Shown one piece after another: positions 26,232-56,891 of a DNA stretch of 64,000 nucleotides; position 1 is the first letter of the stretch, and every line of letters starts with the position of its first letter. The notes below the pieces were generated by a model that worked only from the letters and a program-made list of their open reading frames with translations, was not told where the DNA came from and searched no databases. Source of the DNA: Botryllus schlosseri (taxonomy: Eukaryota); NCBI GenBank assembly GCA_051294905.1, contig CM119386.1, positions 11,098,001-11,162,000 on the forward strand. The letters run 5' to 3'. The translations under genes and the position numbers were made by a program.

Positions 26232-26239
26232 GTCTCACG

Positions 26240-27605: not shown

Positions 27606-27868
27606 ATTTAAAATATATTGGGCAGATCCGGTTTAATATTTTTCCTAAAGTCCAGGATCCGGAACGCGGTCATAATATCATAAACATATCATAGCGTCAA
27701 CGGAAGGCATCTGTATTCTAAAATCGCCTCTAACGCTGGATGATAGTGAATTTTTACGACCGAAATTCATGGAATAAATTTTCTCTTGACAGCAAAAATC
27801 AAACCGGATTCGAAAATTGAAAATCCGCTCATCTCTGATCAGATATGATCGGAGTCAGATATGCTTAT

Positions 27869-29291: not shown

Positions 29292-29406
29292 ATGCTTATT
29301 CTGCTTTGCAGATTTTGAAAGTGCAAACAGCTCACTTTCCAGTTGATTGACTCAGTCGGGTTAAAAATATCTGTAATATGTAGCGTTTACATAACATGAG
29401 TGTAAC

Positions 29407-32289: not shown

Positions 32290-33092
32290 ACTCGGCGCTA
32301 GCTTCTCACGCTATTATTACCCAGATGCTAATTTCCCCTTCTACGTGGGAGTGGGAGCAAGGATTTTCATCCCTGATGACTATCAAGTCGAAGAAACGAA
32401 ACCGACATGTTGCGCTCGTGCATGACTTTCGATGCGCTGTCAGTGTAGTGTCCTATATGGTGTGGACACAAGCAAATCTCAGGGCTCAGTGAAATTGGTC
32501 TCCGCCACATTTTCCATTTGGCAACAAAGGCAACTTTACGGCCATTTTTGACCGGGTTGTCGAGCGCTAAATTCGATAAAACGGGTATCAATGGAAAGCT
32601 GTTGCTGTACTGATTACGAAAATATAAATTTTATTCTGTTCCTGGTCCTGGAATCCCGAAAACCAGCCTCAAATTTTGCATTGTAACCGAGTTTTGACAT
32701 TCTGACACAACAATTCTGTCCGGCAAAACGAGAGTGAAGTTAAGAAAGAAAGAGCCAGGCAGCATTGTTGCGTCACAATTCGAAACTCGATCACAATGCA
32801 AAATTCGAGGCAGGTTTTGGGGGGTTCCGGGACCAGGAGCAAACTAAAATTTGTATTTTCGTGTTCACTACAGCAGCAGCTTTCCATTGATACACGTTTT
32901 ATCCAATTTAGCGCTCGGCAAGCCGGTCAAAAATGGCCGTAAAGTTGCCTTTGACCAAATGGAAAGTGTTACGTCGACCAATTTCACTGAGCCGTGAGAG
33001 ATATGCTTGTTTCCACACCATATAGGACACTATGCTGTGAGTCACGCATCGACCAGCTAGTGAAAAATAAACAAATGCAGCCATCGCCTTAA
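32290..33092 (+). pseudogene. hAT transposase C-terminal (dimerization) domain remnant, split by a foldback insertion
   Basis: PSTWEWEQGFSSLMTIKSKKRNR...HDFRCAVS before 32444 and RIDQLVKNKQMQPSP* after 33035. This matches the Buster/Charlie-type ending (STyxCEqgFS..IKtKkRnRL...RI..LV..KQ..PSH). Confidence 0.8.
32444..33034. mobile_element. Foldback element, family P1 subfamily (591 bp)
   Basis: Ends (TG)TAGTGTCCTATATGGTG / CACCATATAGGACACTATG. Long imperfect arms. 7-bp TSD CTGTCAG / CTGTGAG. Confidence 0.85.
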
Positions 33093-34939: not shown

Positions 34940-37900
34940 ATGAATATGGATACAAAACAACACACCGCCGAAGAGGACGACTTTCTCGCTAAAGGCAACA
35001 TCAGAGACAGTTTTCAGGAATATGAAGAAACTGTAGCTTTGATAGAAAACTTACCGAAAGCATACCGCACACAGACAAGCTCCGAATTATCTGACGAGAA
35101 ATTCATCAGCATACTTGACAAATATCAAGAGCAACCACATTTATTGGACCCACATTTAGAAGACCTACTGAGAAGACTGATGAAATATGTACGGAAGGAG
35201 GATTCATCAAAGTTATTGCTGCACGCTTTCCGATATATGTACCTCATAACGAAAGTCCGAGGGCACAAAGTCATCGTAAGACTGTTCCCACATGAAGTCG
35301 CAGATTTGGAACCCATTATGACAATGTTAGCCAAGCAAGATCCGCATGACCGAGGATCGTGGGAAGTTAAGTACATGCTGTTACTGTGGCTGTCTATGAT
35401 ATGTCTGATTCCGTTTGATATGAAAAGATTTGATAGTTCAAAGAACGAACCGTTGATGGAGAGGATTATAAAAATCGGCAAACTATACCTTACCTTGAAT
35501 ACAGACAACTGTCAAGATGCTGCAGCTTTGGTGCTTGCTAAACTGTTGACCAGGCCCGATGCGCAAGGCGTTCATTTGCCTGCCTTCCTGGACTGGTGTG
35601 TGGAACAAATCAAAGAAGGGGTCCTTGATAAAGTCGCACTGTTGCGTGGCCCGCTTTTGGCACTTGTTGCAATATTCTCCATCGGAAAACGTAGCAACAC
35701 TGTGAGTTATGCTCCTACCATTCTTGAATGCCTGGAGAAGCATGATATTTTCAACAACACTCATTCCAATATGAGGAAATTGGCCGTTAAACTTGTTCAA
35801 AGAATAGGCACTACTTTGTTGAAGCCTATTTTGCCAAAATGGAGATATCATAGAGGATCGAGGTCTTTGAAAGACACCTTGAGTGGTCAGAATTTGAAAT
35901 CAAATGATGAGAAGATGGAGCCTGAAAAAGACGAGGAGGATGAATATGACATCCCTGACGAAATTGAATCAGTCATTGAACATCTTTTAAAAGCTTTATA
36001 CGATTCTGACACCATCGTCCGTTGGTCTGCTGCGAAAGGAATCGGCCGAGTCACTGGGCGTTTACCTCGTGAGCTTGCGGACGAAGTGGTGGGCTCTGTC
36101 ATCGATTGCTTTTCACAGCTTCAGTCTGACGGTGCGTACCATGGCGGATGTCTGACATTAGCAGAACTGGGGAGACGTGGGTTGCTATTACCAGAGAGAC
36201 TTGGTGAAGTAGTTCCGTTATTACTGCGATCGTTGGTTTTCGATGTAAAACGTGGGGCTTTCAGTGTTGGGGCTAATGTTCGTGACTCCGCCTGCTATTT
36301 GGCATGGTCGTTCGCACGTGCGTACGCGTCGGAAGCCATTGCTCCTTTTGTGGATAAGATCGCAGGATCGCTGCTTATCGTTACGGCGTTCGATAGAGAA
36401 GTGAATTGCCGCAGGGCCGCGTCTGCCGCGTTTCAAGAAAATGTTGGCAGACAGGGTCAATTTCCACACGGAATCGACATTCTGACAAAAGCAGACTATT
36501 TTGCTGTCGGCAACCGATCTGACGCGTATTTGGTGATAGCTCCTTATATCGCTTCGTACAAAGAATATACGAAATCCTTCATAGACCATCTGTGTGATCG
36601 CAAGATCGACCATTGGGATATAGACATACAGTGGCTCGCTGCCAAATCTCTCGCAAAGCTAACGCCGCTGAGTCCGTTGTATATGTCTACGGAAGTGTTG
36701 GAAAAGTTGTTACCCATGTGTACAGGAATTGACTTGGTAGGACGCCATGGTAGTATTATCGCTGTCGCTGAGATTATGCATGCACTTTTTGAAGTGGAAA
36801 CAGAAAAGGCGATTGTGGGTTTGATATCAAAGAATAAACATCTAAAGACGATTTACAATATCGTGAAAGTCGCGAGTGATGCGAAACTGTTCCGCGGTTA
36901 CGGTAACGAGCTGATGCGGTTGGCGTGTTGTCATTTAATCACCCGTGCGTCTCAATGCCGCGATTTGATCGCCCCGCCTCCCAGAACCACCGAAAGCTGG
37001 CTGGACATCATCCACGACACGCTTTCCAATCTGCATTTGTTTACAGAGGTTGAAAAAATGTGCGATTCTGCTGTCAATGCGCTGTCGGAGGTGAACCATA
37101 TTACGATACCCGATTTCACTGAAGTAGCCGTAAATAAGGATTCAGCCGGCGACGCTGGAAAGGTGCTGGATCAATATTTATCCAAGCTCAAAAGCTCATC
37201 GGAAAAAGAGAGAGTCGGATATTCCCAAGCAATATCAGCTCTGCCGAGGCATGTACTTCGAGGTAACTACAAAAAAGTTCTGTATACTCTAATGAGAGCT
37301 ACGAAGCCGTACGGCAATGAAACCTCGGCGTTTGCAGAAGCTCATATGCAAGCCGTGCAGGCGTTAGTGAAGATATCTCAATGCATGGAGATTGATGTGA
37401 CGGGCGACCCGGACACATACCTATGCCAGGAAACCCTTAACGATATTTTTGACACCCTTGTAGAGAGCTTGTCGGACTATACGAAAGATTCAAGAGGCGA
37501 CGTAGGATCGATGGTTAGACTTGAGGGTATCAAAGGTATCCGAGCTTTGACAAGTAACCTTGTCAAAAAGCAGTCTGCCATACTGGACGAAGAGATGGTT
37601 ACAAAAATAATGTGCTGTCTCCTGCAACATTCTGGTGAAAAAATACACCGTGTACGCGACGGCGCCAGAGACGCGGTGTACTTAGTTTTGTTTCACGAGC
37701 CAGAAATACCGCACATACCACACCGCGAGGAGTTGCGGCAAATATTTCACAGCGCGACACGTCAACCTGGTATGAAAGACCTTTTCGAAATGACCTCACG
37801 GGTGCTGGCATTCGACGTTTATTTGTACAATATGCTATTGGGACTTGTGGTGTCTGTGGGCGATTTAACGTTGTCGCTAGCTGCTGCAAGTGGTGAGGCT

Positions 37901-38497
37901 CTCTGTGCATATGTCGACAGAATACATAAGCAAGAGCAGCCATTGTTAAAGTTCATGAATACCTTGATTAAGATATTTGAGAATTACCAGAAAGTCACAA
38001 GAGTGTCTCTTCCGTTGCTGAAGACGATTCAATTACTCCTACAGCGAGGTTACTTCACCGGAATCTCTGAAATCATGGAGGACCCGTCGAAATCGGACTC
38101 GCCGATTAATAGCGTTCCCGATCGAATTTTCGCGCTCGTTAAAAACGAGATTGCGCGCACCAAAGACGCACAGAAGATACTGATTGGGCTGGAAGTGTTC
38201 TGTAATTTCTTTCAATTTCCTTCGCCGGAACTGCGTAAGCGCACCATGAGCCGGTTAGTGTGCATGCTGGGCCATCAGTTTCCAAAAGTTCGAAGGTCGA
38301 CCGCGACACAACTCTACGAAGCAGTGTTGACGTACGAAGACTTGGTGCCCGATTGTGAAAATCTCGATACGGTTATCGTGCTTCTCAGTGAGAATGAGTG
38401 GGACGGGCCAATTCAAACTGTGAGGCCAATCAGGAATGAGCTATGCCGGTATTTTGATGTTCCAATTCCAAAATCAATTGCTAAGAAGCCAGAATAA
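34940..38497 (+). CDS. TBCD: Tubulin-specific chaperone D (1185 aa, CDS without introns)
   Basis: Conserved TBCD motifs: [147 protein letters not shown]. One uninterrupted ORF. Confidence 0.97.
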   Translation: [1185 protein letters not shown]

Positions 38498-40353
38498 GTA
38501 ATGCATCCTACATGTTGATCCGTTTTCTGATGTTACTTTACATTTTGGGTGTCAAGACCTATTCATTCGTGTTTACAAGTATGCTGGTGATATGTCAATT
38601 GGTTAATTATGAGATATAAAGTAGTTGCACTGTTCCTGCAATTTATATGTGAATTTGTTGTATGAGCACTGTTCTTTTGTTGTAATTCGGCGGAATACAC
38701 TAGAATGACTAGATCATTTATAGTAAATGAATCTTGTGTATTTGTAAGGTGGTGAAGTCTGTCATGTAAGTGGCAATGTGCAGTCGATAGTAGAACTAGT
38801 GTCGAGCTGGCCTGGCACAGTTATGGCATTCAGCCCTACTAATTTGGTAGATTTACTGTATGATGATGGGTTGCATGCCCTGAACTACCAAAGTATAGCA
38901 TAAGGTACGTTTTGGTGAGGTCAACCCAGTTCTCGATGGAACTGTGAAGCAAAAATGTAGTGAACTAGGTTCTCTGGCAACAGGGGTCAACTAGCATGAA
39001 AACACAAGCACTGAAATTTCATTTAGCGTCATTAGGGGCAATGTAACTTGATGATTTCACTATCGACACGAAACTGATTTCCTCATAAAACCTCAAGCGA
39101 GAGCTTCTTAGAACAACTACCAGTGGCGAAAACCAACCATGCTTCGACAAAGTCGAGTTACTTTTATATTGACCACCGTAGTTCCAATCGACTCTACAGT
39201 TGGACCCAAATCAAGACTATATCAACGTCAGAAACTGACATTGGCCTCTACCCAATTGTTCAAACCTTTCAACAAACTCATTACAAGCAAACACTGAAAG
39301 CAAGGTTCCGACATAACTCGATCATGTCACGCAGATCTAACCGCTCCAGAATTCAACTAAACCCTACAACGGCGACAGCATTTTATCAATTTATTAAAGC
39401 ACTGTACAGAAGGAAATGGTACCTACAAAATCGTCACAGTAGAGCACTCCATCTACGAACGAAACGTTTTTCTTGTCATAAAAGCAACATCAAGTCGTAC
39501 ACACAGAGCGACGCAAGGCATCGCCCGACTCTTGCGATAATGACATTTTACAAACAATTTGAAACGCGAAGTAAGGTCTAGGTTTCAGGTGGCGATTGTC
39601 GGCCTCCGAGAACAAGAAAAACATCGAGGCAAAAGTGAGAAAATAAAAAAAGTATCTCAAACTTTACAGCGGAAGCAGCCACTGGAAAAACTGATGAAAT
39701 TAACCGTCATAACCGACTTTCGTTGAGTCAAACCAGTTGTCAGTCATGATACGAAATCAGACTTCCCCACCGACAGAAACAGAACACATAGACGAATAGT
39801 ACGAATTGCAAATCTGCCAGTTAGCTTCACCGTAACAAAGCCTTACATTCGAATAGCAAAGAATGAGGTGAATAAGTGACAGCAAACGCGCAAGAAATAA
39901 AATAAGGTTTCCAGGTTACGAATGACACCCGAATCACCAGAATTCTACAATACTTGGTGAGCTACACCCATATACAGAGCATTATCGGATTCTGTAATTT
40001 ACGGCATATTCAATTCGGTTCGTAGTAACTACATGTATCTGCGTTATAAATATAGGCAGTTCGAGTCTCAGAAAATCACACGCTACATCGTTATAATCGC
40101 ATGGATCACTTTGCCTTACACATCATTACCCGTTATCCACGAGTAACCAGGCTGTGACGAGTATAATCGAGTCAGCTGTACTCTCTATTCCCTTTCGGTA
40201 ATTCGATCGAATGTAAGTGCATGCGATGTGTATAAAATTCGTGTCTGGTGGTTAAGATCCTTCCGGAAATATCATCACAACCGCTAAACGACAGTATGTA
40301 GTTCCAATAAAATACGGCGTCGTGTTTCTTCTGGCGCTCTAGCCGCGATGTGG

Positions 40354-43300
40354 TCACTTTTTGTGTAAGGAGCGCGCGCTTACCATTCCCCCATCGTCAG
40401 GCCTTCGCATGTTGCTGGCGCCCGCGAGTCCAGACTGCATATGATGGTGTTGCTGTGAATTACATGAAAATGAAGACCAAAAATACACATTTTATTGCTC
40501 GGCACAACTGTACCAGGGTCGTCATTGTGCGAATCATTTCACACTGAGATGAGCCAAAATAAATTCTGATTTTGTCAATAAAAGGCATGACCAGCACACA
40601 GTTAAACCGAAAAATCAAATATAATCGCTAGCAGAACATATTCAAGTTATGGCAATATCATATGCAGGGTGTTCGACTCGTGCAAGTCACAATGCTGGAC
40701 TATTCCACCCAGTTGCTATGCCGATTTCACTAGAGAAAATCAATGGAAACATTTACCCAAAACTGCATTAGCCTCGCCCAAAATAACAGCCAAGAAGAAG
40801 TGATCTTAATATAGCCTAAAAACACTGCTACTTGAAAAAGTTCAAAGAAATCTATTTGAGTATTTAAAAAAAGTAGAAGTGCTTCATTACCGACCACCTC
40901 TGGCGAATACCCGGCGACAAAGTAAAACACACACGGTCGCTTTCGGGCATATCTCGCAGCAAAGGCACCGCAGCATAACACACACACACACACACACACT
41001 GTACTCACCAATCTGGGAATGCCGTCCGGCGTCATAGTAGCAGCGGCGCCTCGGTGCAAACGACTGCTCACGTGCCTCTCTCTTTCCGCTCGCGACATGG
41101 GCCTCGACGAGGATGATGCTGCGAATAAGATACGTACTCCGTCAGACAATACGTAACTCGGGAGAATTTTAGACAGACACCGATCATCTTGCGTTTCTCT
41201 TTCTTCTCCTTTACATTCCAACACCGCACAAGTCCAATTCGCTGCTGCTAGCGATAAAGCTCTACACGTATCTACGAGCGTGACACAGACACAGTTTGAT
41301 TTCATTTATTTAAATAAATCTCTCGCAATCGGCAGAGGCAAAACAGTCATATCGCTTACGTTTACACTAGATTTAAACATTTCATTTACGGAACAAAAAA
41401 GTGCATTAACTACTTATAGAACGGACATATTCCCGGACAGTGTACGGGACTTGGTGTGGCTTTGCAGACACGAATGGCGTCGCATAGAACCTGCGAGTGT
41501 TCGCGTTTGGAGACGGAGACCGAGTTTTCCTTGCGATACGATCCTTCGCGAGTTGCAAGGCGTCAGGTCCGCCGTGCGTAAGAGCACGATCCTTGGCACC
41601 GTAGCCACCAGAGTCGCCGACGTACGCGGTTTTCCGCGCCCATCTCACGTCACCTTGATGCTTCTTGAACAGTATGGAACGGATTATCGCTTCTTTCTCA
41701 GACGGCGGTATGTCATCCCCATTTTTCGTCGGTGGCGCTTTAGCCACGTCGCTTACACGCTCTTCAGCCACGTGCTTTCTAGCCAAGTCCTCTCGGCTTT
41801 TACGGCTTTCGGCCCGACTCTTGCTTCTAGACCTGGACACATGGACTATAGTTGCGTTTTTGTCTTCAGCCGCATTTCTTCGTTCATGCGACAGCCATTT
41901 TAGTGTTCTCTTCTGCATTTTGAGTCCTACAGGAGTGGCCTTACCTTTAGGCCATGCGTCCGCATAGTAGATGACGCCTTTGGCGTCAGCGTCCCCAGCC
42001 GATGTGGTCCTCGGCATTTCCGGCTTAGACTCACGTTCAGATATCGGCCTGGCGCTTTTAGGCTTCGTCCGCGTGGCAGGCTCTATTTTCCTCGTGTCAA
42101 CTTGACACTCCTTTTTCTCTTTATCATCTCTAGACGGTGATCGCGATCGGCTACTAGTGGATTTCCGAGATTTTCGGCCACTGTTCACGCTCGGCGATCT
42201 CTTAGACCGGTCCCCGGCTTTGGGGCGTCGGCTGAGGTGGCTCGGCGGCGGCGCACGGGGCGCGTTCGAATCGTACAGCTTCAAATAACCCCGAAAAACT
42301 TTTGCAAATTCTTTGCTAGACAGCACCGCGTTGTTGTCTTTCGATGGGTGATGTCTGCCATCAACAGGGTCGAAGAAATTAGCGACACGCACGATAGAGT
42401 AAGGTAAATTACGAGGGTCGTCACACCCTGGCGACACACTTTTCAGAGTGAGCATCTCTCGTGAGCTTAACGCTGTCCGGCTACGTTTGCTGCAGTCTGA
42501 GGGCGCCACCTTTTGCTTGAAAACCACTGAGGATCGGCGGTCGGTGCCTCGTGCACCTTGGAAGGATATTTCTCTATCGTTAGCGGCAGATTTTCGACGC
42601 TGCGCTAGTTTCCAGTTGCTGACGTGATGGCGTTCGCCGTCGGCGGCTGTTTTCGGCCTTTGATTTTTCTGCCTGGTCATATCGCTTTCGCTTTTTGCCG
42701 CGACTGTCCTCTGCTGGCTCCGTTTTTTCTTGCTCTGCGGGTCTGGCAATAATACGCACGTCAACCAAAAGCACACTTTCAATACTGACGTACGTCTGCT
42801 TATATCTATCTACTAATCTACCTACAAACTACCTTTTTCTGTGGACTCCAGCGACGATTTACATCTGGCTCTGGCGGCGTGCGGCTCGCTCTGCTTGGGC
42901 TCGTATCTAGTTTTCGAAGAGGTCTAAAAGTAGCGTTCTGCGTTCACACATATCTCATAGTTTGGCGCTACATACCCTGCCTACAGTGCACACTATGCCA
43001 TGAAATCTAAAAGTACATTCTAGATAAATCGCCTAGATGACATATGGACAATTGGACATTGCCTACCGACAAATGCTACTTTCGCTCTTGTTGTTTGTCC
43101 TTTTATGATATCTACTATTACTTTTCATTCACGCATGCCTTTTATTTACATGCCCTAGGTCAGTGGTTCTTAACCAGGGTTCACTGTCTCGAGGGTTCGC
43201 CAGAGGTCAAGCCACAGACCCGACTCATACAGTGGCAGGCCCACTGATCTCCAGCATTTATTCATTGTTGTCTGTTTCATGTGAAATCGTGTCTGGTGTT

Positions 43301-46300
43301 GTTCTTTTAACACTGGCATTGATACACAGCTCATTTTGTGCACCGGTAATATTTAGTAATGTATTAGATGTGCGATGTGGTGGACTTTTGGTTTTGCGAC
43401 TAGGAGAAAATTAGAAGTTCGCTGAAGGCTTGCAAATTAGGGTAAGGGTTTGCCAGGTTAGTAAAGGTTATGAATCACTGCTCTAGGCCAAGGTGGGCGT
43501 CTGATTAAACACTACTATTGCTCTAGGCCAAGGTGGGCGTCTGATTAAACACTACTATAAGTCCTTTGGACACTCTCTTATCTTCTCATTATCGCTATCT
43601 TGTGGGGTTTTTGAATCGACATAAACATTAAATACTGACTGACTGTTTGGCGATGTAAATGAATGTGAGTCAAAGAGCTCTCGACTGAATTAATCTGACC
43701 TCGAATGTCGAATCCCTCACTACATTTACTTTTTTCTTCCCGATCTGATCCAACGTCGACTTCGACACAATGTAGTTGACCAAACCGCCGTGATCCGGAG
43801 CCCATCTCGTTTTGGCGATGCCGTGGCTTCGCGAAAACAACAGAGTGCCTTTGCTCTCGCCTGCCTTCACGTAGCCTCGATTCTTGTTGCCTTTACCGAA
43901 GTATACACGGTTGGCGTTTCTATGCCTGTCTGCGTCACTCCTGCCATCTGACACTACAGTGTTGTGTATCGATTCCATGCTGCCGACAGAGGCGCAGTCT
44001 TTAAGCAGCCAGTTCAAGGCCTTGGTCTTGCAGCGTAGCTCGTATTCTGTGGTGATCTGTCTCATGAGCGGATGGCAGGTGAGCTGCAGGCTGGCTAGGG
44101 CGTGCGAAGTTTTCTCGTTCCCCTGTCCGACATCATTGTGTTTCGATGATTTTTCTTTCAGCGAAGTCCGGCTTGTACGCTTCGCTGGATGAGACAGAGA
44201 CAAGCATAGTATCAAGAGAGAGAGAGGGAGAGAGAGCAAAATGATAATCGCTTATTTAGCACACATGACATTGTGTAGGAAACCCAACATGAAATCGGTA
44301 AAACTATAGATAACTAACCTACGGATAGATACGCAACACCCGTCGTCACGCTTGCTTGCCCGGCAGAAATTACTGCTCAGCAATCTGAACGCAACATAAT
44401 TGCTAATCCCATAGCGGACGACCCGCGTGCTAAAATTCAATGAAGTTGATCTTATTTGAAAGCTACTGTCACACTGATTCCGAAAATATACATTACAATC
44501 TAATCAGGGCAATGGAACCCCCTTAAAATACACCTCAGAGTCTGAAAATCGGCATTGTTTTGAACAATCGCAACCATGCAAGTGCCATTGTTATGGGCAT
44601 TGGGATGCGTCGCTGCGATTGCTTAGAACAATGCCGATTTTCAGACTTTGAGGTGTATTTCAAGGGGGTCCCATTGCCCTGATTAGATTGTAATGTATAT
44701 TTTCGGAATCAGTGCGACAGTAGCTTTCAAATGAGATCAATTTTATCGTATTTAAGCACGCGGGTCGTCATCAATGGGATTAGCAATTATGCTGCCTTCA
44801 GATTGCTGAGCAGAAATTTCCTGCGGGCAAGCAAGCGTGACGACGGGTGTTGCGTATCTTTCTGTAGGTTAGTTATCTATAGTAAAACGGACATCTGTTC
44901 CGAAACGATCTCAGACGTCAATTTGGTCTACAGACAGTATTGATTTTTGCTGGCGAATATTACTTTCTATGTGCCTTCATTTCGGCGTGCAGGCAAAAGG
45001 ATTGCGGGATAGGCAACTAAAACGATTTTGCAAATCTAGTTTACCACCGACATTCACTTGCACGAGTCCAAGACACACAACACGTACAGTAGTGATACAG
45101 AACATATAGAGACATTTCAAAGACAATGAACACACCAATATCGACAGACGAGAGACGTTGAATACTGATACCATAACAACAACGGCAGAAATTCACAATC
45201 GGCTATGTACGCCATCGATAGCATTTCCTACAAGATATTATTGAATAATATATTCACATTGAAATAAACCAAATATTTTCGGCTGACACACGTCAGGGTC
45301 ATCGTCACCAATTAGTAGACCATTACCCCTTGACGAGTGCCAGCCGAAAATATTCGGGTTTATTTCAAAATGAATTTATATCATTCAATTGTATATCTGC
45401 ACATTCAAGAGTCTCAACAAGACATTATCGTGTCTAGCATCATGACATTATTCAAACGTGTGAAACTAGAAATCAGCGGTGCCATGCAAATAGAGAGTAA
45501 TGAAACAAATTAAGAAAACCAACATCAATTAAAGGGATTTTCCATGTGTGTGAAGAAACGTCACTACATTCAGACAGAATTCTATGGCATTTTTAGAATT
45601 TATCACTAGATCCACACCGAAGTAATAAATGATAAACATCTAATCAGTAACCTCCGACCTCTAAATTGAAATCAATAAGATGTGATTATCAATGGAAAAT
45701 TACTAAGCAGAAAGTGACGAACCACCTTCCAAGAAAACTCGTGTGGTTTCCAGTGTACACAGAAGGCTATTTATGATACTGTAATGGCTTGTGTTATTAT
45801 GTTTCAATACCATAAGATAATGTCTCAATGGGAGCAGTTTGTTTCCAACAAAGGAAAACACATCAAAAAGGGACTGCCTTGTTTACATAAAGGATCTGAA
45901 ATCACAACAAACGTTATAATTGTATTGTGTGAGGGTTGGATACATTTAAATGGACCGGGCCAAGGGAATTCGGCGTCATGACATCATATATTTAGCCACA
46001 TAACAAGTTTGTCGGAATCTCAAATTTCACAGGCATTCCATTCTTGTGAAGGTTTTCAGGGTGGAGAAACATGTCAAACTTGTATTCCTTTACATACCAA
46101 CATTACAATCAAACACCAGTCAAAGGGCAATTATTATGAAATAGTGTAACAAACCTATACCAATGAGGCTTGTTGCATCGGGATTTGAAAATATAGGAGG
46201 AAAGCAGTTCCTTTTTGCCATCACCATCAACATGCTTGGACAATTGGGATGCCGAGTGCCTATAGCGGGGAAGCCAACGAGTTTCTGGTCTAACCCTGGA

Positions 46301-49300
46301 CTGAAGCTTGACGTAGTACCACTATGGTAGGCCTACTTGGAACTTGGAAAGATTGCAACATGAGTATTGCTTTCCTAGACAACTCCAAGTCCTTTAGAGC
46401 CAAAGAGGCGCAAAGCTTGAATATGAATCATAGTTCACCAGAAAAACAGGAAGGGTTTAAAAAATTTCAGATGTTCTCGCCAAATCTTTATGAACAGAAG
46501 TGCAAAAATAACACTGAGTAAGTATTGCCAGTAAAATGACGATATGTAGTGTTAAGCTATGTTCAATTGTTCATGAGCAAGGCACACACAGCTGACTTAT
46601 AGACATTTTTAATGCAAAATGTCAACAGAAATGGTAAAATCGTAGTCGGACACACAACGGAACCCAGAGAGATTGATTTGTTGATCGCCGCAAAACAATA
46701 ATCGAATGTATCAACAACATGTATCGACACAGAATTGCACGAGAGCACTCCGCAACTTTCCACCATTGGGTAAACAATATTTCAAATGTATGTCCGTTAC
46801 TGTGTTTGCTCGTAGCGCAGTTGGTATAAGATAGCGTTGTAGGAAAACGATCGATAATACCGTTGACAGAAATACACGTGTAACAATGCGGCTACCACAA
46901 ACAGAGGCACAAAGACAAGCACATACTACATTGATAACGTAACCAATTCTTCTAAACGACATACACCTTCAACGGAGACGCATAGCTCATAAGATCCTAC
47001 ACTCTCAATGGTATCGGCTATCTACCACTGAAAACTGTCACACAGTCACACTATTCCTACGACACAGCAGACCGGTCTCCCTGCACAAAGTCTACATGAC
47101 TGCAGTTACCTTTTCTTGCCTTAACCTTCCGATTCTATCCTCAAAAAGGAGCTAACAAAAACATGCCTGAACTTGATTCGTGTGACCAATTTTACTAACT
47201 GTACCCCGCTGTTGCTTGACATATACGATACTATCATGTTGACGATGTCACAATATTAAATCTTACTTTGTCCGTGATGAGCAGCTGAGCTTTGCATTTG
47301 GCGAATGCCCGTGGCGGCAGTGCCGCCGAGCGCGCGGTTCGTGGATGAACGAGTATGCTGGGTTCGATCTTCCCGGTCCTTCCTATCTTTGTCTTGCCCG
47401 TCGGCGTTATTCCGGCTACTCTGTAACACAAACGCATGTGTAACAGACTTACGTTGTTGAATACCGAAGATATAATTCCGTGCACACGAGATAACCCGTT
47501 TAGAAATTACATCTTTGCGATGTAAATCAAAAACAAACAAGAGGTAGACAGCATAGTGCAACAGTAAAGATAGGCCTACGCAGTAGACAGATGACAGAGG
47601 AGTGGTAATAGATTTAAAATCCAAAATTCCAATCAATGGAAGGCTCAGAAAAATACCAGAGATGGTCAGGGTAGTCACTGCTGATGTAAAGCCGTAAATT
47701 TCTGCTCCATTAAAAGTAGAAGTATCTATTACAACGACATGTTTAACTAATTAAAGTAGAAGTAGGAAATGAAGATATGAAAATTATTCGAGTTAGTAGT
47801 TTCATAAAGTAGATTTGGTTGATCTGTCGCATACTTTAAGAAGATAATCGGAAACGGCCACTTTCCAAATTCAAAAGAGCATTCTCACGTCTGACTCAAA
47901 ACAATCGTTGACAATACCATAAATAGGTGCCAATGCACTGTTCGAAGATATTATACAGTTACCGTGATAAAGGGTCTCGTTCGCTTAGTTGTCATGATAA
48001 TTTCACTCATGAAAATGCCACAAGCACCTACTTTAAAAATCCAAGGTTAGAGAAATGAGTGGTTTTGCCTACAAAACTGCAAAGCAAGTTCGTAGCACTA
48101 GTAAACAAATCCCACTTGGGTACTCAAACCGACCAGTGACAAGTGACCACCTCTGGACAGGACATTATCGAAAATGTAGTAGGCCTACCGTACATGAATG
48201 ATGCAAGTGGCGCTAACGACCAAAGCTTGAATCGGAACATTTGTCTTGCGAAAAAGAATATCAACATTTCCAGAAGTAAAATCGCCATCGGGCGTAAAGC
48301 AAGATCAAAAAGTAACGGGGCGTGTTGTCAGGTTTGTTTGTTGTGAAACTGAGCATGGTTAAACAACCATCATCCAATCCAGGCTATATCGGAAGGAAAC
48401 GAAATATGTTGTATTGTGGCAATTTAATGGAACAAGCGAGACCGGCAACAATCGAAATACCACAGGAGATTACCAAAGATAAAACCTTTGACGGCAATAC
48501 TGCAGTTGGGATTATTCCATAAGAATGCAGTTGGTCAGCACAGAAAGGTCAACGACATTCCTGAACTCAAAATTAACGGTTTCCACTTGTAAAATAATGA
48601 ATTGCACCTTTATGAAGCTGTCACAATTAGTCACTAAACATTTCCAATTACCAGTGTCGGAATTCACAAAACGGACAAGGCAAGTAATAATATAGGGCCT
48701 AGGACAGCTGTTTGGGATAGAGGCTAATTAAATGGGGTTGAAGAGAAATAAAAGATGTTATCTTAGATACGGACCAACACAATGAATACATTCTCGGATA
48801 TGACGCAATGAAAAACATATTCATCTCATTGTATCAAGCACCCCCTCACGAAAAAGAAATGTCACGTTCAAAACATAATGGTCCTCAAGCCGCCAACGGA
48901 GTTGATTCCTCATTCAAATTTCTCAATGAGCGTCGGACCACGGGACGGCCGCGATTAATCATTCATGATTCCCATATAGAATTGAATTACCCAGACACAA
49001 AGGGTTGAATTAATCTTTGTTGAAATCGACAAAAAAAGCTGCTCAAGTATCCGCCTCGTGAGCATGTCACAATGGCGACCTACACTTTAATTTCAAGCAC
49101 ATACAAATGAAGCAATGTTTTTGTAGCATCTACGATAACTGATATCAGCCTATTATTCATACGCGGTTTGGGTGAGATTCAGGGTCCAAAAGACACAAAT
49201 TACTTCAACTAGACATAGTAATCATCCTGACAAGAATGAGATTGTCAATTCTCGCTCTATCTAAAGAGCTTAAAGACACACAAACATGCATTGCGGATGG

Positions 49301-52300
49301 GTATTGAATACAGTAAATTCGTGTCAACTCTATTAGGCTACGAGCAAAACACAAGATCCCTTTTATCGACATCAACACACTCCATTACTTATTGGGTATA
49401 ATCCGAAGAAAATACCTCTTCAAATTTCAACACCTGTCCATATTGTAACAATCATAATAAGATCACACTTACAAATTTCAACATATTCCAATCGAACACG
49501 TAGTCGTACGTGAAGCCTTGTCTGTGAAAGAGATTTCGGAACAACTGACGCAGGTAGGAGTAGTCGGGCTTGTCGTCGAATCGCAACGATCGGCAATAAT
49601 TTAGGTAAGTGGCGAATTCACCTGCGCAAGAATCGTTCGTAAGCATGTGAAGGAAACCACAGATGTTGTGAGAGAAGGTTTAGCCATTGGTCGATGGGGA
49701 ATAACAACGGTCTACGCGGCATGCAATGTTTTTCTCAAATCCAACAGTTTACGTTCATGAATTTTTTTAAATGTGATGAGTTTGAAGTAGGAAGATACGG
49801 CACATTTGCATTGTAAAAAATCGGACTATTATTTCATAAAATACAAGTATTGTAAACACTTGTAATCATGATGGAACATCAATATACACTTCCATACCAT
49901 AGTATAGTATAGCATAGCTTTACTCATTTCAATCAAGTCAGCTCCAAAATTTGAGAGATGTCTTTTACATGGATCATTCAAGAACATTCGATGATATTAT
50001 TAACATAATACACACAACCCACACAAAAATCTTTGCCTATCAGCAGATTCGTGTAGTGTCAGCACACGCAAGGAACCATTTTATCAGATACCACCACAGA
50101 TACACCAACTGACTCCGACGTATATCAATATCAAGCTCAATTTCCAAATTGCACGAGTGAAAATCCATGAATGTTACGTTTATCTTTTGAGCGTCAAAAA
50201 TCTGATAAAAGCTAGGAGTGGTAAGCCACAATTGTGCGGAATAGACTCGGATAGTCCTAGACACCGTATAAAGCATAGAGCGAGCGAATTTAGCTGGAGG
50301 GTTTGGTTACCGTAATTGCAACATGAGAAAAAGTCAGCGAACGACGGCAAAGGTTATCATATCAGAATGATTATCGCGCGGCTAAATCGGGAAACAGGAT
50401 ACGAAATTTGAGCTTGACTTTGGCGATGTAGGAGAAGATATAAAGACGCTTTGCGATACAACAGTCCATGTCGTTAACACACTAGAAGTTAACTAAGTTA
50501 ACTAACGATACACCATGTAATAAGAGCAATTACAACATAATCAGAATAAATCTGGTTTATTGCTGTGATTGTGTTAATAACAAGACTATCGCCAAAAACC
50601 AAATATCTAAACAACCAATACCGTGTCATCAGCCAATATCAGTGACGTCTCAATGCACTAACATTGGTGCTGAGCAGCCACTGCTATATGAAATGGTTCA
50701 ATGTTCATGTGTTTACAGTTATACAAAATTATGAAACTAGTGTTTATCATCAAATGACATCACAGATGGCCACAAGAGGAGGTTTGATTTTTAATACAGG
50801 CGAGACCAAACGCTCCACTGCAGACGGCTGCTTCACGTATTGGTCCGCTAACCCCAGATTTTCACAGAATTGGGTTACAGTTCAAAAATAGACAGATTCC
50901 TAACTGTCAAGAAAGCATAAAATCACAACAGCGGCACTCGACCTAAGGCGACTTCCAAGAAATGTGACACCGCAAAAGTGCACGTCACAACAAGACTGTG
51001 ACTTACACGGGAATCCTTTGCAGAGCAATTCGATCGGGGTTGACATTTTCTTTTCGCTGATCCTCTCGTACTTTTGCCGCTTGGTAGCAGCCTTTAAACC
51101 CTGCCACGGCAGGCTGCCAAGGTTGAAGTACATCATCACGTATCCCAGCGATTCCAAATCGTCCCGTCGACTTTGTTCTGAAATTAAATAATCACATCGT
51201 AGACCCAGGGTTGGCAGTGTATGAATAATAGACTGTACCAGTACTTGTGAGTTCAACATGCTGTGGCAAGGTAGGGTCAAAAAATAGGAAATGATGGTAT
51301 ATTGTAATATCGGTCAAATATAACAGCAAGGTTATGTCTATATTGTCTAAAGAGCATCTAATTCAAACAAGGCTGTGTAAGCATATGAGAATATTTAACC
51401 TGTCAGCCGAGAGATAATGATAATGTATCGACACAATTTTCCAGGAAATCTGATTAAACCCAGCAAAAAATTGAATCTGTCGTATGACGGAAAACAAAAC
51501 ACCAACTCTAGGTTTCACAGGTCAAAAAATATGAGTCATGTTTACATTATTTTGGTGGTAATATTGCGATGTGAGGATGAAAGTTGGGAGAAACTGCATC
51601 GGAGAGAAGACGTCACACAATTCACCATCTACGTCAGCCACACGGGGAAACTGCAGCACAATATTGTTAGAGTGAGATCCACCAATATCCAATAGGATTG
51701 CGGCAGAGTGTGTATAAAGTCATTTTATGGAAACAGACAGCCACCAACAAGCACACAAAACTAGCAAAATTAATGTTTACTGCAGAAAAAGGTTCTCCCC
51801 AAACTGGATTAATGTATAAGTATAACCAATTACAATGGACAAACAATGATTTAACCAGTGATGCTTTCAGGAGTGATTGATCACAATCAGATGAGAAGTC
51901 ATTGCCCCGAGGCATGGTGAGGTAACAAACCATGAACAGAACAGTGTCAAATTTCATTAACCATAATCGAAAACAGATATAAAACCTCTCGAGCATTCGA
52001 GAAGAAATACTTTTGGAATCAGCATTGTTAATAACGAATTCCAAACCTACCAATTCCCAAGTGCGTATTGATTGAGGCGTAACGAGCTGTCCCTGTCAAG
52101 TTCTTGTTCTCCCTGTACGGGATGTGCTGATGTGTCCTGGCGTCCCGGAACTTTTTCGCGAGACCAAAATCGATTATATAGACTAGGTTTCCCTTTTTGC
52201 CAAGACCCATCAGGAAATTGTCGGGCTTGACGTCGCGGTGGATGAAATTTTTGCTGTGGATGTATTCGATTCGGCTTATCTGAAGCAACAGATTGAGATG

Positions 52301-55300
52301 TGAGAGCCTATCCAGATCCAGATAGGAATCCATTGATTTGACATCTGTAGCCTACATCATTAGTGAGGCATACTGCTATTACATGCCAGACATATTACCT
52401 GTAGTAGGCTACCTTGCATAGTTTTGAACACGGAAACATTCTAGGCTAAATCAGGCACGAGACCGTCAAGTAAAAAACGTACAACACAAAAAAATTACCT
52501 ACCACCACTAGTTGCAATTCTGAAGTTTTTCATGAAAATTGATTGGATCTATAGCACGACATATTACAATCAACTTGTGGGAATATATGAGCAATCGACA
52601 GACGGATGTTTGTCGATAACGCCAGGACTTCCCATTAATGTTTAAACAAACACAGCAATCAAAATCTGATAGCTGCATTTACAAACATAGTCTTGACAAA
52701 GTCAACGAGTCCTGAGGAAATATTGGCTTTAATAATGGGGGAATGATGCCAACGTAAATTAGCCAAGCTCTAGAAGGCAGCAATTAAATTGTAATGATGG
52801 GAATCAATAGGTACGTATTAGATAGCATGGGTATGCTTTGTGGAGTTATGTTGCACTGTTGCATAATGATGGACTTGTCCTGATCACAGTACTATCCACT
52901 AATTGATTCAGAGATATTCCAAGTAGGCTAACCTCATGATAATAATGAAACGTGCTTGCTGCCTCAAAAAAAATAGTCACATTCATCGATTCGAGAGACG
53001 GAGTTAAAGTGTACATAACATTGTGATGGGGCTTTTCATGCAATAGAATTCAGGGCCGAAATAAACTGGACAACACGGGTCTAATGACCTGTCAAGTGGA
53101 ATGCCTTTGAAACACAATACCACTAACAAAACACACCTCGTTAATGGTTGGATACCCATTCCTATCACTATCATGGTTGGTGTAATTGCACTGAGCATCT
53201 TACAACCTAGTAAACATAATGACTCCTGACGCAATCAGAGGCTTGACACGCTCAATATATGTTTGATTGACAATTGATTCAACGAAATGGAGCATATTGC
53301 AGAAAGGGACCAGAAAGAAATCAAGCTGATACAAAGCTGTCAATATTTAATGTGCCGTACAAAAATATCGGAAGGTATCGCAAAAACAGCCACGGTGGTC
53401 GGTGATTGCTATACTAAAGCAGGGCATTTGATCACCAAAAGAATATCCCATAAAATCCACAATTGGAAAGGACACCTTCTAATTAGGAAATTGTGAAATT
53501 TTCTCTTGCATGCCGAAATGCTAATAAATCAACGCATAAGAGAACATCTAACATGTATGGATTCTGGAGTAGCAACACACTGTACAGTACCTACCGCCAA
53601 ATTTGATTTATAGAACCAGTGCAAAACCGGTATTAGATGATGCTACTCGTGATACGATTAGATATGAATCCCACCACGGTCAGTTACAGCATATTATAAA
53701 CCACTTGCGGGCATTCGACACCTATACCGTTATAAAACTGAAGTAGTTTCGTGTTCCTACAGTAGATAAATACCACGGGAAAACAAACGGCCTTTCAAAT
53801 AAGGTAGGCAGAGATATATTCAGGAGATTTTCCATTTTAAAATACAGAAAATATTTTGATCAAAAGTGCAGAACACTATTATTTACTTTATTCGAACATC
53901 AGATTGCATTTATGAGTCATGCGTATACGTCATTATAAACAATACTGTACCTATTGTATGAACATGAATCATACCCTGCTGCTTTCAACTGCATCACATA
54001 CACAAATGATTATTATTAACTGGATATTGGTGCATGTACAATGTACTACATTGATAATTAAATCACAGACCAGTATGTACCTACATACAGTGTCCATAAA
54101 ACGTAAAAAGAAGCACGTTTCTCATCATTGGAAAATGAAGTGGTTTATGTTTGGATGATAGGCTTGTTTAAATGTTACGTTAATCTCACTGCTGCGGGCA
54201 TCTGCAGAGGGGTTTGGCTTAAAACATGACGTCAAAGGTGTGACTGCCTTAACCGTAGAAAAGATGCAGCTGAAAATAAGGTCACCGACTCCCACAGATT
54301 GTTGACTACATACAGTCTGGCGACCTGAAATTACATATGCTAACTTACCAACTGATCCGCGAGCAGAAGGACTGTTTTCAGACTGAATTTTCTTGAACAA
54401 AAGTTGAACAAGTCTTCGAGACTTGGTCCTAACAGCTCCATCACGAGTACGTTATAATCACCTTCGGCACCACACCATTTTACCGTTGGGATCCCAACTG
54501 TAATAGTAACAAATCTTATAATCGCAGAACTACAAATTACACGATATGATGCAAATGGTCTACCATTCTACTACATATATGGAAATTCTCAAACTTTACA
54601 GACACAGACGAAATTCCCAAGAGGTTGTCTCATACTTGAGTCAAAATTACCAGTATTATCAATACATGGGCTGCTGCAACTAGAATTACTGTGTCTTTGT
54701 TAGATTATGCCGCAATTCTTGGTCCGCTAGCGATAAGATGTATAGCCAGCACCAGCATTAGCTAGACATTGACTAGCTTGCACGGGCAAAATCACAAAGT
54801 CGCTGCAACAAAGAGCGGGTATATTTTTTGATCAAAAGACATCAAATATTGGTAATTGTTAGGTAGATGAAATTATCACAAACTTGAGATGGAGATGACA
54901 GATTAGCCTTTTGCTGTTGGGATTTAAATTCAATTTAGATCGTGAACACTGGGGCGCAAAATTTGTCAATAAATATAATACCGTACGGAATTTTGTGTGT
55001 AGGCTCTATCTAATGATAATGCACTAACTGTGAGACATCATAAAAACAGCAAATACGCGCTTCTTTTCAATTTGCATACAACTATCAAAACACGAATTCA
55101 ACATGATCATTGCAGCAGCTGCATTCCCAGCAAGTAACAACGTGACTAATTCCATTAGTTTCTAGTTTCTACTTCAGTCACCAAGTCATGACATCAAGGG
55201 ACTGCTAGTTGTGGTATCTCCAAACAACTAGCACTGCTATTCAACCAGCACAATACAATTGTTAGTCACTTGATGACCACCTTTAAAATACAAAGCCGTG

Positions 55301-56891
55301 AGAGAAAATACGTGGCCAGGATAATTGTTACTGTAACATGAGCAGTAAGGTGTTTTTGAGAGGGATAACACTGAATCATTACCCACCCAGTATTCAAGAG
55401 ATTCAGCAGTGCTTCAAGTCTTAGAATGCACTTGTACGATGTACATTTTACAGGTTCTTACAGCTACCGATATCTGTGGGAAACATTGATAGTGATGCTC
55501 AGGTGTTGAATCTTTAATCACTTCATAGCACAGATACAGAATTATTCAACAAAATGCACTACGCCATACGGTGCACTGTGCACACCAATCAATCCCTAAT
55601 CGTAACAGGCTGTCTAGACACGGCCTTTGTTTTCCAACAATATTTATCACATGTACAAATTCACAAGACAAAAAAAGCCCATGCTTTACATGATTTGGCA
55701 TTTACCAAACGGTCTGTAATCAAAATAATTTTTATATCGGTCGAATTCTAGCAATTACAGCAATTGACATACAGCAATGACGATATCCATCATAAATATT
55801 GAATATATATATTGTTACAAGTTGGCATAGATAGCCTACTACTCTGAAATCAGCTTGTTGCTGTACAATACAGTACATTATTGAAATATGACTGCCATCA
55901 CAGTAGACATTTCAACACCACATTTTCACGTTGCCCGGCTTTGGTTTCCTGCTTTCAGCAAAACATTGATATAATTTAGCAAGGCGCCAGGGTGCTGAAC
56001 TGCAGGGTCAGGGGATTGATAGTCGGATTCAATTGTCAATAACTGACTAACGCACCTCCGCCTTGCATCATTTTATAAAATTTGCTTTCTATATGGAGTT
56101 GTGGATGCTTCGTCTTCACACATTCTAACTTAATCGCCACTTCTTCGGCGGTTGATATATTGGTACCTGAAAAAAGAAACAGTTGATCGCCATGCAAACC
56201 GTAAATTCGTTTTTCAACCAATCTACACCTCATTCTTGAAATACAACAAAAATACCCTATTCAGAAAAAAACAGACAGATCACCAATTCACCATGCAGCA
56301 GAATGTCCCCAGAGGCCTAGAAATTCTGATCGAGTTTCCAAGTAATCTAACAGATTCATAATTGCATATTGAATACCCAAACACTAATAGTGGACAATAC
56401 GCTACCTGCTAAAGCGCAATGCAAGGTATGAGCTTATGGAGCTATACTTATGATGTGATATTATTGCCCCCCCCCCCGGTTTAGAACGTTGATGTTTCTA
56501 CAATAAATATTTTCATACAGCTACATGAATATTGAATAACCATCGTCTAGGTGTCATTAACGTTCGGTAAAGACATACGGATATTCGCAGCTGCTGGAAA
56601 CCGTTACACAATAATGTGATCTCACAATAACAAAAACAAATTGAGAGAAACTGATAGATATGCATAAAGGACAGACTGAAGTTATACAACCAAGGTCTGT
56701 CACTATTGGAGACAGGTGTCCCAACCAAAGTCACCAATTGGGATATTAACAGGACCGACATTTCATTCATTTACGACTAGAAATAGTATAGTTGATATCA
56801 AAAAATCCAACCCACCAAGATAAATGTCACCAAACGAGCCGCTGCCAATCTTGCGGCCGAGTCTGTATTTGTTTCCGACGCGTAGCTCCAT
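40354..56891 (-). CDS. CSNK1D/E: Casein kinase 1 delta/epsilon, canonical isoform (~415 aa)
   Basis: Exons (minus strand): 56891-56816 (76 nt, [26 protein letters not shown]), 56166-56056 (111), 54497-54349 (149), 52279-52051 (229, HRDVKPDNF...DFGLAK), 51177-51007 (171), 49621-49473 (149), 47420-47267 (154), 41118-41009 (110, [22 protein letters not shown], like vertebrate [20 protein letters not shown]), and a putative last exon 40452-40354. All are GT-AG and in phase. The last exon is the least certain. Confidence 0.92.
40979..40999. repeat. (CA)n microsatellite immediately inside CK1 intron 8
   Basis: CACACA run a few nt from the exon-8 donor. Confidence 0.9.
41406..42742 (-). CDS. Putative alternative CK1 C-terminal exon B (444 aa, basic, Arg/Ser/Lys-rich)
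   Basis: Long ORF with coding-like GC content inside CK1 intron 7. Acceptor TTATTGCCAG| at 42743 is phase 1, matching the exon-7 donor. Stop at 41406, AATAAA about 100 nt downstream. Confidence 0.7.
43161..43480. mobile_element. hAT (Charlie-like) MITE, 320 bp
   Basis: Ends CAGTGGTTCTTAACC / GGTTATGAATCACTG. TSD CCCTAGGT / CTCTAGGC (6/8, NNCTAGGN-type target). Confidence 0.75.
43481..43560. repeat. 40-bp tandem duplication
   Basis: CTCTAGGCCAAGGTGGGCGTCTGATTAAACACTACTA occurs twice, starting at the right TSD of the MITE. Confidence 0.95.
43670..44184 (-). CDS. Putative alternative CK1 C-terminal exon A (170 aa)
   Basis: ORF with coding-like GC content in CK1 intron 7. A long (CT)n polypyrimidine tract precedes CATCCAG| at 44185. 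Phase 1, matching exon 7. Stop at 43670. Confidence 0.62.
44305..44881. mobile_element. Foldback element, family P2 (P/Galileo-like), 577 bp
   Basis: Arms ~44305-44560 and ~44625-44881 are reverse complements. Ends TATAGATAAC / GTTATCTATA. 7-bp direct repeat GTAAAAC at 44298-44304 and 44882-44888. Confidence 0.82.
45250..45378. repeat. Short imperfect hairpin (MITE-like)
   Basis: ~50-bp arms (ATTGAAATAAACCAAATATTTTCGGCTG / CAGCCGAAAATATTCGGGTTTATTTCAAAAT). No TSD recognised. Confidence 0.7.
47657..48155. mobile_element. Degenerate CAGAGGTGGTC-family hAT MITE in CK1 intron 6
   Basis: Ends CAGAGATGGTCA / TGACCACCTCTG. AAGTAGAAGT repeats. TSD not preserved. Confidence 0.65.

What the first reader, a model, noticed from the sequence alone, without database searches (positions are those of the whole stretch)
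40354..47420. Overall architecture: a CK1 tail-switching cassette (three phase-1 acceptors after one donor)
Seen: the exon-7 donor (phase 1) is followed by three acceptors, all phase 1 (44184, 42742, 41118), each opening a long frame. Read-through of exon 7 also stops cleanly (..HGQSKI*, 349 aa, nearly tail-less). The last exon holds a strong internal donor (ATG|GTAAGC, ~40383) that could yield another terminus. Inference: one kinase domain with four or more interchangeable regulatory tails, from constitutively active to RS-targeted, set by alternative last-exon choice and polyadenylation.
Basis: inference. Interest (0 to 1): 0.75.

Follow-up and report, generated by a model that had tools for sequence, protein, structure and literature searches.

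The report
CK1 kinase with alternative giant tail
A sea-squirt casein kinase 1 delta/epsilon gene carries, inside its seventh intron, a conserved three-exon block that can replace the usual short regulatory tail with a tail of about 630 amino acids of unknown function, so it has two alternative ends rather than the four or more first proposed.

Summary
The sequence facts hold. A CK1 delta/epsilon gene lies on the minus strand. Exon 7 (47420-47267) ends in phase 1, and AG acceptors at 44184, 42742 and 41118 each open a frame in phase 1.

Frames A (44184-43730) and B (42742-41406) are not independent last exons. The chain A-X-B reads open for 627 codons, ends in its own stop, and has AATAAA 96 nt further on.

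The same A, X, B, CK1 exon 8 order recurs in other ascidian DNA, with the same phases and length classes. X, B and exon 8 are seen in three other pieces of ascidian DNA and A in two. A fourth contig has matching reading frames, but its DNA could not be read.

In Styela clava the annotated kinase gene has a 997-aa product whose coding sequence ends at the B stop. That equals exons 1-7 (346 aa) plus A-X-B (651 aa).

The best reading is two alternative 3' modules: the canonical exons 8-9 (415 aa) or A-X-B (973 aa).

- The "tail-less" read-through has no support.
- The exon-9 "internal donor" is probably just Val-Ser codons.
- No conserved RS domain exists.

No spliced RNA was seen here.

The parts
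47267..56891 (-). CK1 delta/epsilon exons 1-7 (kinase domain plus proximal tail). Exons are 56891-56816, 56166-56056, 54497-54349, 52279-52051, 51177-51007, 49621-49473 and 47420-47267. Together they make 1039 nt, which is 346 codons plus 1 base.
   Evidence: All junctions are GT-AG and the reading is continuous. Exon 4 best matches solved CK1 delta and epsilon structures at E 2e-47, against 1e-38 for alpha and 1e-29 for gamma.
47267..47420 (-). Exon 7, the last exon common to both isoforms. Its donor is AAA|GTAAGA, phase 1.
   Evidence: The same donor phase occurs in Styela clava (CAAA|GTATTA).
43730..44184 (-). Exon A, 455 nt. The phase-1 acceptor follows a long CT-rich tract, and the donor is phase 0 (AAA|GTAAAT).
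   Evidence: It is 59-64% identical to P0003 and P0004 and 39% identical to Styela over the aligned 115 residues. Length is 455, 455 and 440 nt in three species, all 2 mod 3. The part before the first in-frame Met is conserved as protein only in this frame: score 63 against -6 +/- 8 for shuffles.
42833..42923 (-). The acceptor is phase 0 (ttttag|ACC) and the donor phase 1 (AAG|GTAGTT). It bridges A to B.
   Evidence: Counterparts are 94, 85 and 73 nt in L001, Styela and L002, all 1 mod 3. The peptide carries a conserved RCKS motif. Window against L001 scores 56, reached by 0 of 5000 shuffles.
41406..42742 (-). Exon B, 1337 nt including the TAA stop at 41408-41406. It has a phase-1 acceptor and is the terminal coding exon of the long tail.
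   Evidence: Homologues are P0001 and P0002 (49% identity, E 1e-102 to 1e-108), P0005 (E 1e-16) and Styela (31%). Lengths are 1337, 1400, 1430 and 1313 nt, all 2 mod 3.
41305..41310 (-). AATAAA poly(A) signal, 96 nt after the B stop and 187 nt before the exon 8 acceptor.
   Evidence: AATAAA lies 76-97 nt after the B stop in all four species examined.
41009..41118 (-). Exon 8, 110 nt: the canonical distal tail. Phase 1 in, phase 0 out.
   Evidence: Its only match among solved structures is residues 355-382 of full-length CK1 delta (6pxn_A). It lies just downstream of B in L001, L002 and Styela.
40354..40452 (-). Exon 9, 99 nt including the TGA stop: the canonical C-terminus ..[14 protein letters not shown].
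   Evidence: The last nine residues are identical in Styela clava despite 7 silent differences in the last 30 nt.

Best explanation
The window comes from a stolidobranch ascidian and holds a CK1 delta/epsilon gene with two alternative 3' modules after exon 7.

Module 1 is the canonical pair, exons 8 and 9. It gives a 415-aa kinase whose distal tail is homologous to the tail of vertebrate CK1 delta.

Module 2 lies wholly inside intron 7. It consists of three exons: A (455 nt), X (91 nt) and B (1337 nt). They splice in compatible phases (1 to 0, 0 to 1, 1 to stop) and end at their own stop codon and AATAAA. The result is a 973-aa kinase in which the canonical distal tail is replaced by a 627-aa extension. 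This extension is very basic (net charge about +70), rich in serine and mostly disordered, with short conserved motifs and helices.

The choice is most likely made by competition. One outcome is splicing of the exon 7 donor to the A acceptor followed by cleavage at the intronic poly(A) site. The other is read-through of that site and splicing to exon 8.

What is shown:
- the exon chain, its phases and the poly(A) signal;
- their conservation across deeply diverged ascidians;
- agreement with an annotated 997-aa kinase product in Styela clava.

What is inferred:
- that exon 7 is the exon joined to A in this species;
- that the swap removes the canonical tail's autoinhibition and gives new targeting or docking.
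For: 1. The junction codon plus A, X and B read open: 627 codons in the window, 649 in L001 and 651 in Styela. Exon lengths always fall in the same class modulo 3.
2. Protein similarity between species stops exactly at the A donor. The read-through tails that follow differ: VNVVRD..*, VQ* and VNAISS..*.
3. Replacement differences are far fewer than silent ones in every block: pN 0.15-0.38 against pS 0.81-1.0. This includes the first 40 codons of A and exon X.
4. In the window there is no in-frame ATG between the upstream stop and codon 41 of A. Yet those codons are conserved as protein in this frame only. An upstream phase-1 coding exon is therefore required, and exon 7 is the adjacent one.
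5. X, B and CK1 exon 8 lie in the same order in L001, L002 and Styela L003, with A ahead of them in L001 and L003 (L002 starts 193 nt before X). The contig carrying P0002 and P0004 has matching reading frames but no readable DNA.
6. The Styela clava record lists a minus-strand gene with a Pkinase domain and a 997-aa product. Its coding range ends at 19178, the last base of the B stop. 346 + 651 = 997.
7. AATAAA lies 76-97 nt after the B stop in four species.
Against: - No spliced RNA or cDNA was available for any species.
- The Styela model may be a computational prediction, and gene predictors can fuse a nested gene to its host.
- Only the length, Pfam hits and end coordinate of the 997-aa product were seen, not its sequence.
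- The profile search for B found no long fusion protein. This may reflect how the library is clustered.
- Phase 1 is common in this gene (5 of 7 donors), so the phase match alone is weak.
- In L001 and Styela an in-frame ATG lies 8-11 codons after the A acceptor. A separate, possibly trans-spliced, mRNA could therefore encode nearly all of A-X-B there.
Confidence: 0.78

Rival explanations
1. A-X-B is a separate gene nested in CK1 intron 7 on the same strand. It has its own promoter and a short unseen 5' exon, or receives a spliced leader at the A acceptor. Its product is a free protein of about 600 aa that is never joined to the kinase.
For: - It has its own stop and poly(A) signal.
- In-frame ATGs lie soon after the acceptor in L001 (codon 11) and Styela (codon 8).
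- Other notes on this genome suspect spliced-leader trans-splicing.
- No long fusion protein turned up in the profile search.
- A short conserved exon could escape detection, as X did in tblastn.
Against: - In the window the first in-frame ATG is codon 41. It is preceded by an out-of-frame ATGATG, yet codons 2-40 are conserved as protein.
- From general knowledge, not tested here: the spliced leaders known in tunicates carry no start codon.
- No conserved block lies between exon 7 and A when the window is compared with Styela.
- The Styela product of 997 aa with a kinase domain ends at the B stop.
Confidence: 0.14
2. One reading: A, B and exon 8 are three independent alternative last exons. 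Adding intron read-through and an exon-9 internal donor gives four or more interchangeable tails.
For: - All three acceptors are phase 1.
- Exon 7 to B direct is in frame and gives 791 aa.
- A followed by read-through does reach a stop.
Against: - A has a conserved phase-0 donor, and similarity ends exactly there.
- Exon X links A to B in frame in every species where both were read, and X to B in L002 as well.
- There is no AATAAA or ATTAAA in the first 400 nt after the A stop (read).
- The Styela model length fits only A+X+B. The alternatives would give 823 aa or about 500 aa.
- The exon-9 donor region is conserved as coding sequence.
Confidence: 0.05
3. A, X and B are conserved but untranslated or non-functional sequence, such as remains of a mobile element or a pseudogene. 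The Styela model would then be an annotation artefact.
For: - No Pfam family matches A or B.
- The structure models are poor, with pLDDT 36 and 43.
- A foldback element lies 119 nt upstream of A.
Against: - Frames of 627-651 codons are kept open in three lineages whose silent sites are saturated.
- Replacement differences are two to five times fewer than silent ones.
- Every exon keeps the same length class modulo 3 in all species read.
- There is one copy per contig, always at the same place in the CK1 gene.
Confidence: 0.03

Closest known systems
Vertebrate CK1 delta splice variants delta1 and delta2 (and CK1 epsilon)
   Same: One kinase domain is joined to alternative C-terminal ends by choice of 3' exon. 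The tail governs autoinhibition by autophosphorylation (bioRxiv 10.1101/2023.04.24.538174, abstract; PMC9794997). Exon 8 here is homologous to CK1 delta residues 355-382.
   Different: By my own knowledge, the vertebrate variants differ only in the last 10-16 or so residues. Here about 69 canonical residues are exchanged for 627 residues from three dedicated exons with their own poly(A) site. These have no detectable relative outside ascidians.
Insect doubletime (dbt) tail isoforms
   Same: [quoted passage not shown] Tail length varies from about 50 to more than 250 residues (PMC9794997).
   Different: The insect isoforms described there arise by skipping small internal tail exons (exons 9 and 10 in Pyrrhocoris). 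They do not arise from an intronic terminal module. No tail near 680 residues (exon 7 part plus A-X-B) is reported.
Alternative last exons with intronic polyadenylation (general mechanism, e.g. secreted versus membrane immunoglobulin mu chains; established knowledge)
   Same: A terminal exon block with its own stop and AATAAA sits inside an intron, upstream of the constitutive 3' exons. The outcome depends on splicing against cleavage and read-through.
   Different: Usage, regulation and tissue pattern are unknown here. The module has three exons rather than one composite or skipped terminal exon.
Annotated 997-aa protein kinase gene of Styela clava (GCA_964204865.2, OZ123516.1)
   Same: It has the same gene neighbourhood, with an intronless TBCD convergent to the kinase gene, and the same exon order. 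Its product length equals exons 1-7 plus A-X-B, and its coding end is at the B stop.
   Different: It is a different species (TBCD 67%, A 39% and B 31% identical). Only the length, Pfam hits and coordinates of the model were available here, not its sequence, name or transcript support.

Membership tests
Casein kinase 1 delta/epsilon | The kinase domain is closest to CK1 delta/epsilon rather than to alpha or gamma. | tested here: met
   Exon 4 (76 aa) matches CK1 delta and epsilon chains at E 2e-47, alpha at about 1e-38 and gamma at about 1e-29.
Casein kinase 1 delta/epsilon | An intact coding sequence with a canonical C-terminal tail. | tested here: met
   Nine GT-AG exons give 415 aa with no internal stop. 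Exon 8 aligns to residues 355-382 of full-length CK1 delta, 6pxn_A.
Alternative last-exon / intronic polyadenylation isoform | The acceptor of the alternative block is in phase with the upstream constitutive donor, and the block has no start codon of its own. | tested here: met
   The exon 7 donor and the A acceptor are both phase 1. There is no in-frame ATG before codon 41 of A, while codons 2-40 are conserved as protein.
Alternative last-exon / intronic polyadenylation isoform | Its own stop codon and poly(A) signal lie upstream of the next constitutive exon. | tested here: met
   TAA is at 41408-41406 and AATAAA at 41310-41305. AATAAA is at +76 to +97 in four species.
Alternative last-exon / intronic polyadenylation isoform | An mRNA that joins exon 7 to the alternative block. 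| not testable with these tools
   There is no RNA data. The indirect evidence is the Styela clava gene model of 997 aa, equal to 346 + 651, ending at the B stop.
Independent nested gene | Its own conserved start codon and 5' exon or promoter. | tested here: not met
   The window has no usable ATG, and no conserved block lies between exon 7 and A when compared with Styela. The power of this test is limited for very short exons.
SR / RS-domain protein | A conserved run of Arg-Ser dipeptides, usually together with an RNA-recognition motif. | tested here: not met
   RS/SR counts are 28, 20 and 16 in three species, against about 17 expected from composition. The RS runs do not align between species, and there is no Pfam domain.

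The most novel reading that the evidence does not exclude
The locus has a double use. The A acceptor is spliced in cis to CK1 exon 7, giving a kinase fused to a 627-aa basic docking tail that lacks the canonical autoinhibitory end. The same acceptor also receives a spliced leader, giving a free A-X-B protein that could compete with or regulate the fused kinase. A+X (546 nt, a multiple of three) would be a cassette that can be skipped, allowing a graded series of 415, 791 and 973 aa. This would be a stolidobranch-specific gene capture by an otherwise very conservative clock and Wnt kinase.
Probability: 0.15. Interest if true: 0.7.

Novelty: new variant of a known kind. Interest (0 to 1): 0.5.

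Why it matters
CK1 delta/epsilon is one of the most conserved animal kinases, with roles in circadian timing, Wnt signalling and DNA damage responses. Its activity is set largely by its short, autophosphorylated tail. By my own knowledge, the known vertebrate tail variants differ by only about ten to sixteen residues, and those small swaps already change kinase behaviour.

Here a chordate lineage has kept, through divergence deep enough to saturate silent sites, a second ending that removes the canonical distal tail and adds about 630 residues with conserved motifs. If it is expressed, it is a natural experiment on how the tail controls CK1, and an example of a lineage-specific coding module captured as an alternative last-exon block.

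In practice, gene models for this genome should carry exon X and the 973-aa isoform. A and B should not be treated as separate tails.

Tried and rejected
- Pfam scan of A, B, exon 7 and exon 8: only sub-threshold noise.
- BLASTP of A against B: no similarity, so they are not duplicates.
- ESM Atlas look-alikes of A: best score 0.73, uninformative.
- AlphaFold2 of A (pLDDT 36) and of B (pLDDT 43, three helices): too poor for a fold search, so none was run.
- Profile search of B against 1.84 billion representatives: only P0002 and P0005, with no long fusion and no relative outside these contigs.
- Search for an exon 10 downstream of exon 9 by comparison with L002: nothing convincing. The internal donor was then rejected on coding conservation.
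- Search for a conserved hidden exon between exon 7 and A, window against Styela and L001: nothing.
- TBCD synteny in two more distant ascidian-like assemblies, L004 and L005: no CK1 next to TBCD. The one weak A-like hit (E 0.007) was judged to be chance.
- Literature searches for the sequencing-run accessions and for ascidian CK1 isoforms: nothing relevant.
- dN/dS proper could not be computed because silent sites are saturated. Raw proportions are reported instead.
- DNA of the contig carrying P0002 and P0004 could not be fetched.
Full report
**The gene**

The minus strand of the window carries a complete CK1 delta/epsilon gene.
- Seven GT-AG exons from 56891 to 47267 encode 346 codons plus one base.
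- Exon 4 matches solved CK1 delta and epsilon structures at E 2e-47. That is better than alpha (about 1e-38) or gamma (about 1e-29).
- With exon 8 (41118-41009) and exon 9 (40452-40354) the product is 415 aa.
- Exon 8 aligns to one thing only among solved structures: residues 355-382 of full-length CK1 delta. Exons 8-9 are therefore the canonical distal tail.
- The neighbouring intronless TBCD gene (34940-38497, plus strand) is 67% identical to that of Styela clava and about 50% to Ciona and Phallusia. The window therefore comes from a stolidobranch ascidian.

**Checking the observation**

- Exon 7 ends AAA|GTAAGA in phase 1.
- The AGs before 44184, 42742 and 41118 each open a frame in phase 1.
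- The B frame is 467 codons from stop to stop, the third longest in the window.
- Phase 1 is not distinctive, because five of the seven upstream donors share it.

A protein search with frame B found two homologues, from assemblies of public sequencing runs (49% identity). Frame A found two from the same contigs (59-64%).

Contig L001 is genomic. It carries A, then B, then CK1 exon 8, in the same order as the window. At the DNA level only A, B and exon 8 align.

Reading both sequences side by side showed three things.
- Similarity in A ends exactly at a GT. This is AAA|GTAAAT at 43730 in the window and AAA|GTACAG in L001.
- A short block between A and B is conserved. It is bounded by ttttag| and |GTAG.
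- This block (X, 42923-42833, 91 nt) enters in phase 0 and leaves in phase 1.

The chain of junction codon, A, X and B reads open for 627 codons in the window and 649 in L001.

**Conservation**

Silent sites between the window and L001 are saturated (pS 0.81-1.0). Replacement differences are much fewer in every block: pN 0.15-0.38, including exon X and the first 40 codons of A.

A more distant homologue of B (P0005, E 1e-16) lies on contig L002. There it sits again between an X-like exon with the same phases (73 nt) and CK1 exon 8.

Exon lengths across species always fall in the same class modulo 3.

| Exon | Lengths (nt) | Class mod 3 |
|---|---|---|
| A | 455, 455, 440 | 2 |
| X | 91, 94, 85, 73 | 1 |
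| B | 1337, 1400, 1430, 1313 | 2 |

AATAAA follows the B stop by 76-97 nt in all four species.

**Is the module joined to the kinase?**

In the window the frame of A has no ATG between the upstream stop and codon 41. Codons 2-40 are nevertheless conserved as protein with L001, and only in this frame. The score is 63 against -6 +/- 8 for shuffles, and the other two frames contain stops. An upstream coding exon with a phase-1 donor is therefore needed, and exon 7 is the adjacent one.

Independent support comes from Styela clava. Fetching the DNA around its TBCD gene (L003) showed, downstream and convergent, a gene on record with these properties:
- it has a Pkinase domain;
- its product is 997 aa;
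- its coding range ends at position 19178.

In L003 I located exon 7 (its 5' end cut off by the end of the locus), A (440 nt), X (85 nt), B (1430 nt), exon 8 and exon 9. Position 19178 is the last base of the B stop. The A-X-B chain is 651 codons, and 346 + 651 = 997.

No other combination fits. Exon 7 to B direct would give 823 aa, and A with read-through about 500 aa. The check assumes that exons 1-7 of Styela also encode 346 aa. The ungapped 82% match over the part of exon 7 that is visible agrees with that assumption.

**The other proposed tails**
- Sequence after the A donor is not conserved and stops at different places in each species. A is therefore an internal exon.
- The 349-aa read-through product is only the first stop in the retained intron. 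In Styela the intron stops after a different, unrelated peptide.
- The exon-9 'internal donor' ATG|GTAAGC is followed by VSARSLHKK*. Styela has the identical peptide with 7 silent differences in 30 nt. These are codons, not an intron.
- The Arg-Ser runs of the window do not align with the other species, and dipeptide counts fall to the level expected from composition in Styela.

**Nature of the long tail**
- No Pfam family matches.
- No relatives were found beyond these ascidian sequences.
- Structure models are poor.
- The tail is 12% Ser and 22% Lys plus Arg, with net charge about +70.
- Conserved islands stand out in a five-sequence alignment. Three of them are predicted as helices.

It looks like a disordered docking or targeting extension. 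Its function is inferred, not shown.

**Mechanism proposed**

After exon 7 there are two outcomes.
- The donor pairs with the A acceptor, which has a long CT-rich tract, and the transcript is cleaved after B. This gives the 973-aa kinase without the canonical distal tail.
- The polymerase and spliceosome pass the module and use exon 8, giving the 415-aa form.

Because A+X is a multiple of three, an exon 7 to B form (791 aa) is also possible.

**Rivals**

A same-strand nested gene, possibly trans-spliced at the A acceptor, is the main rival. Other notes on this genome suspect spliced-leader trans-splicing. L001 and Styela have early in-frame ATGs in A. I found no conserved extra exon between exon 7 and A, but short exons can be missed, as X was by tblastn.

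No RNA data were available, so the exon 7 to A junction in this species remains an inference.

**Comparison with what is known**

Alternative tails are known for CK1 delta in tetrapods and for doubletime in many insects (PMC9794997; bioRxiv 10.1101/2023.04.24.538174). This case shares the principle. It differs in scale and in using a dedicated three-exon terminal module with its own poly(A) site.

The searches run here found no paper on an ascidian CK1 tail isoform. The isoform does appear to exist already as a gene model in a public Styela clava annotation.

**Verdict**

This is a real and conserved feature.

Noticed in passing
window 44303-44883: A foldback element with 278-nt arms that are 90% complementary, separated by 25 nt. 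It lies in intron 7, 119 nt upstream of the exon A acceptor. No other copy exists in the window. It may be a different family from the foldback elements noted at 25636-33034.
   Followed up: partly
window 43479-43558: A perfect 40-nt tandem duplication in the intron between exons A and X.
   Followed up: no
window 34940-38497; L003 10001-13561; L004, L005, L006: TBCD is a single uninterrupted ORF of about 1180-1200 codons in the window, in Styela clava and in three further contigs that carry TBCD 49-62% identical to the window's. The intronless state is therefore shared by the window, Styela clava and those contigs, not peculiar to this genome. TBCD lies convergent to CK1 in the window and in Styela, but not in L004 or L005.
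   Followed up: partly
window ~41000-40975: A (GT)n microsatellite starts a few bases after the exon 8 donor (TTG|gtgagtacagtgtgtgtgtg..), as read.
   Followed up: no
window 39600-40353: There is no AATAAA or ATTAAA within about 750 nt after the exon 9 stop. The poly(A) signal of the canonical isoform is therefore a variant or lies further on. By contrast the long module has a canonical signal.
   Followed up: no
window 20314-22473 (minus strand): A 720-codon open frame, the second longest in the window, lies in the most GC-rich stretch (GC 0.51). It was not examined.
   Followed up: no
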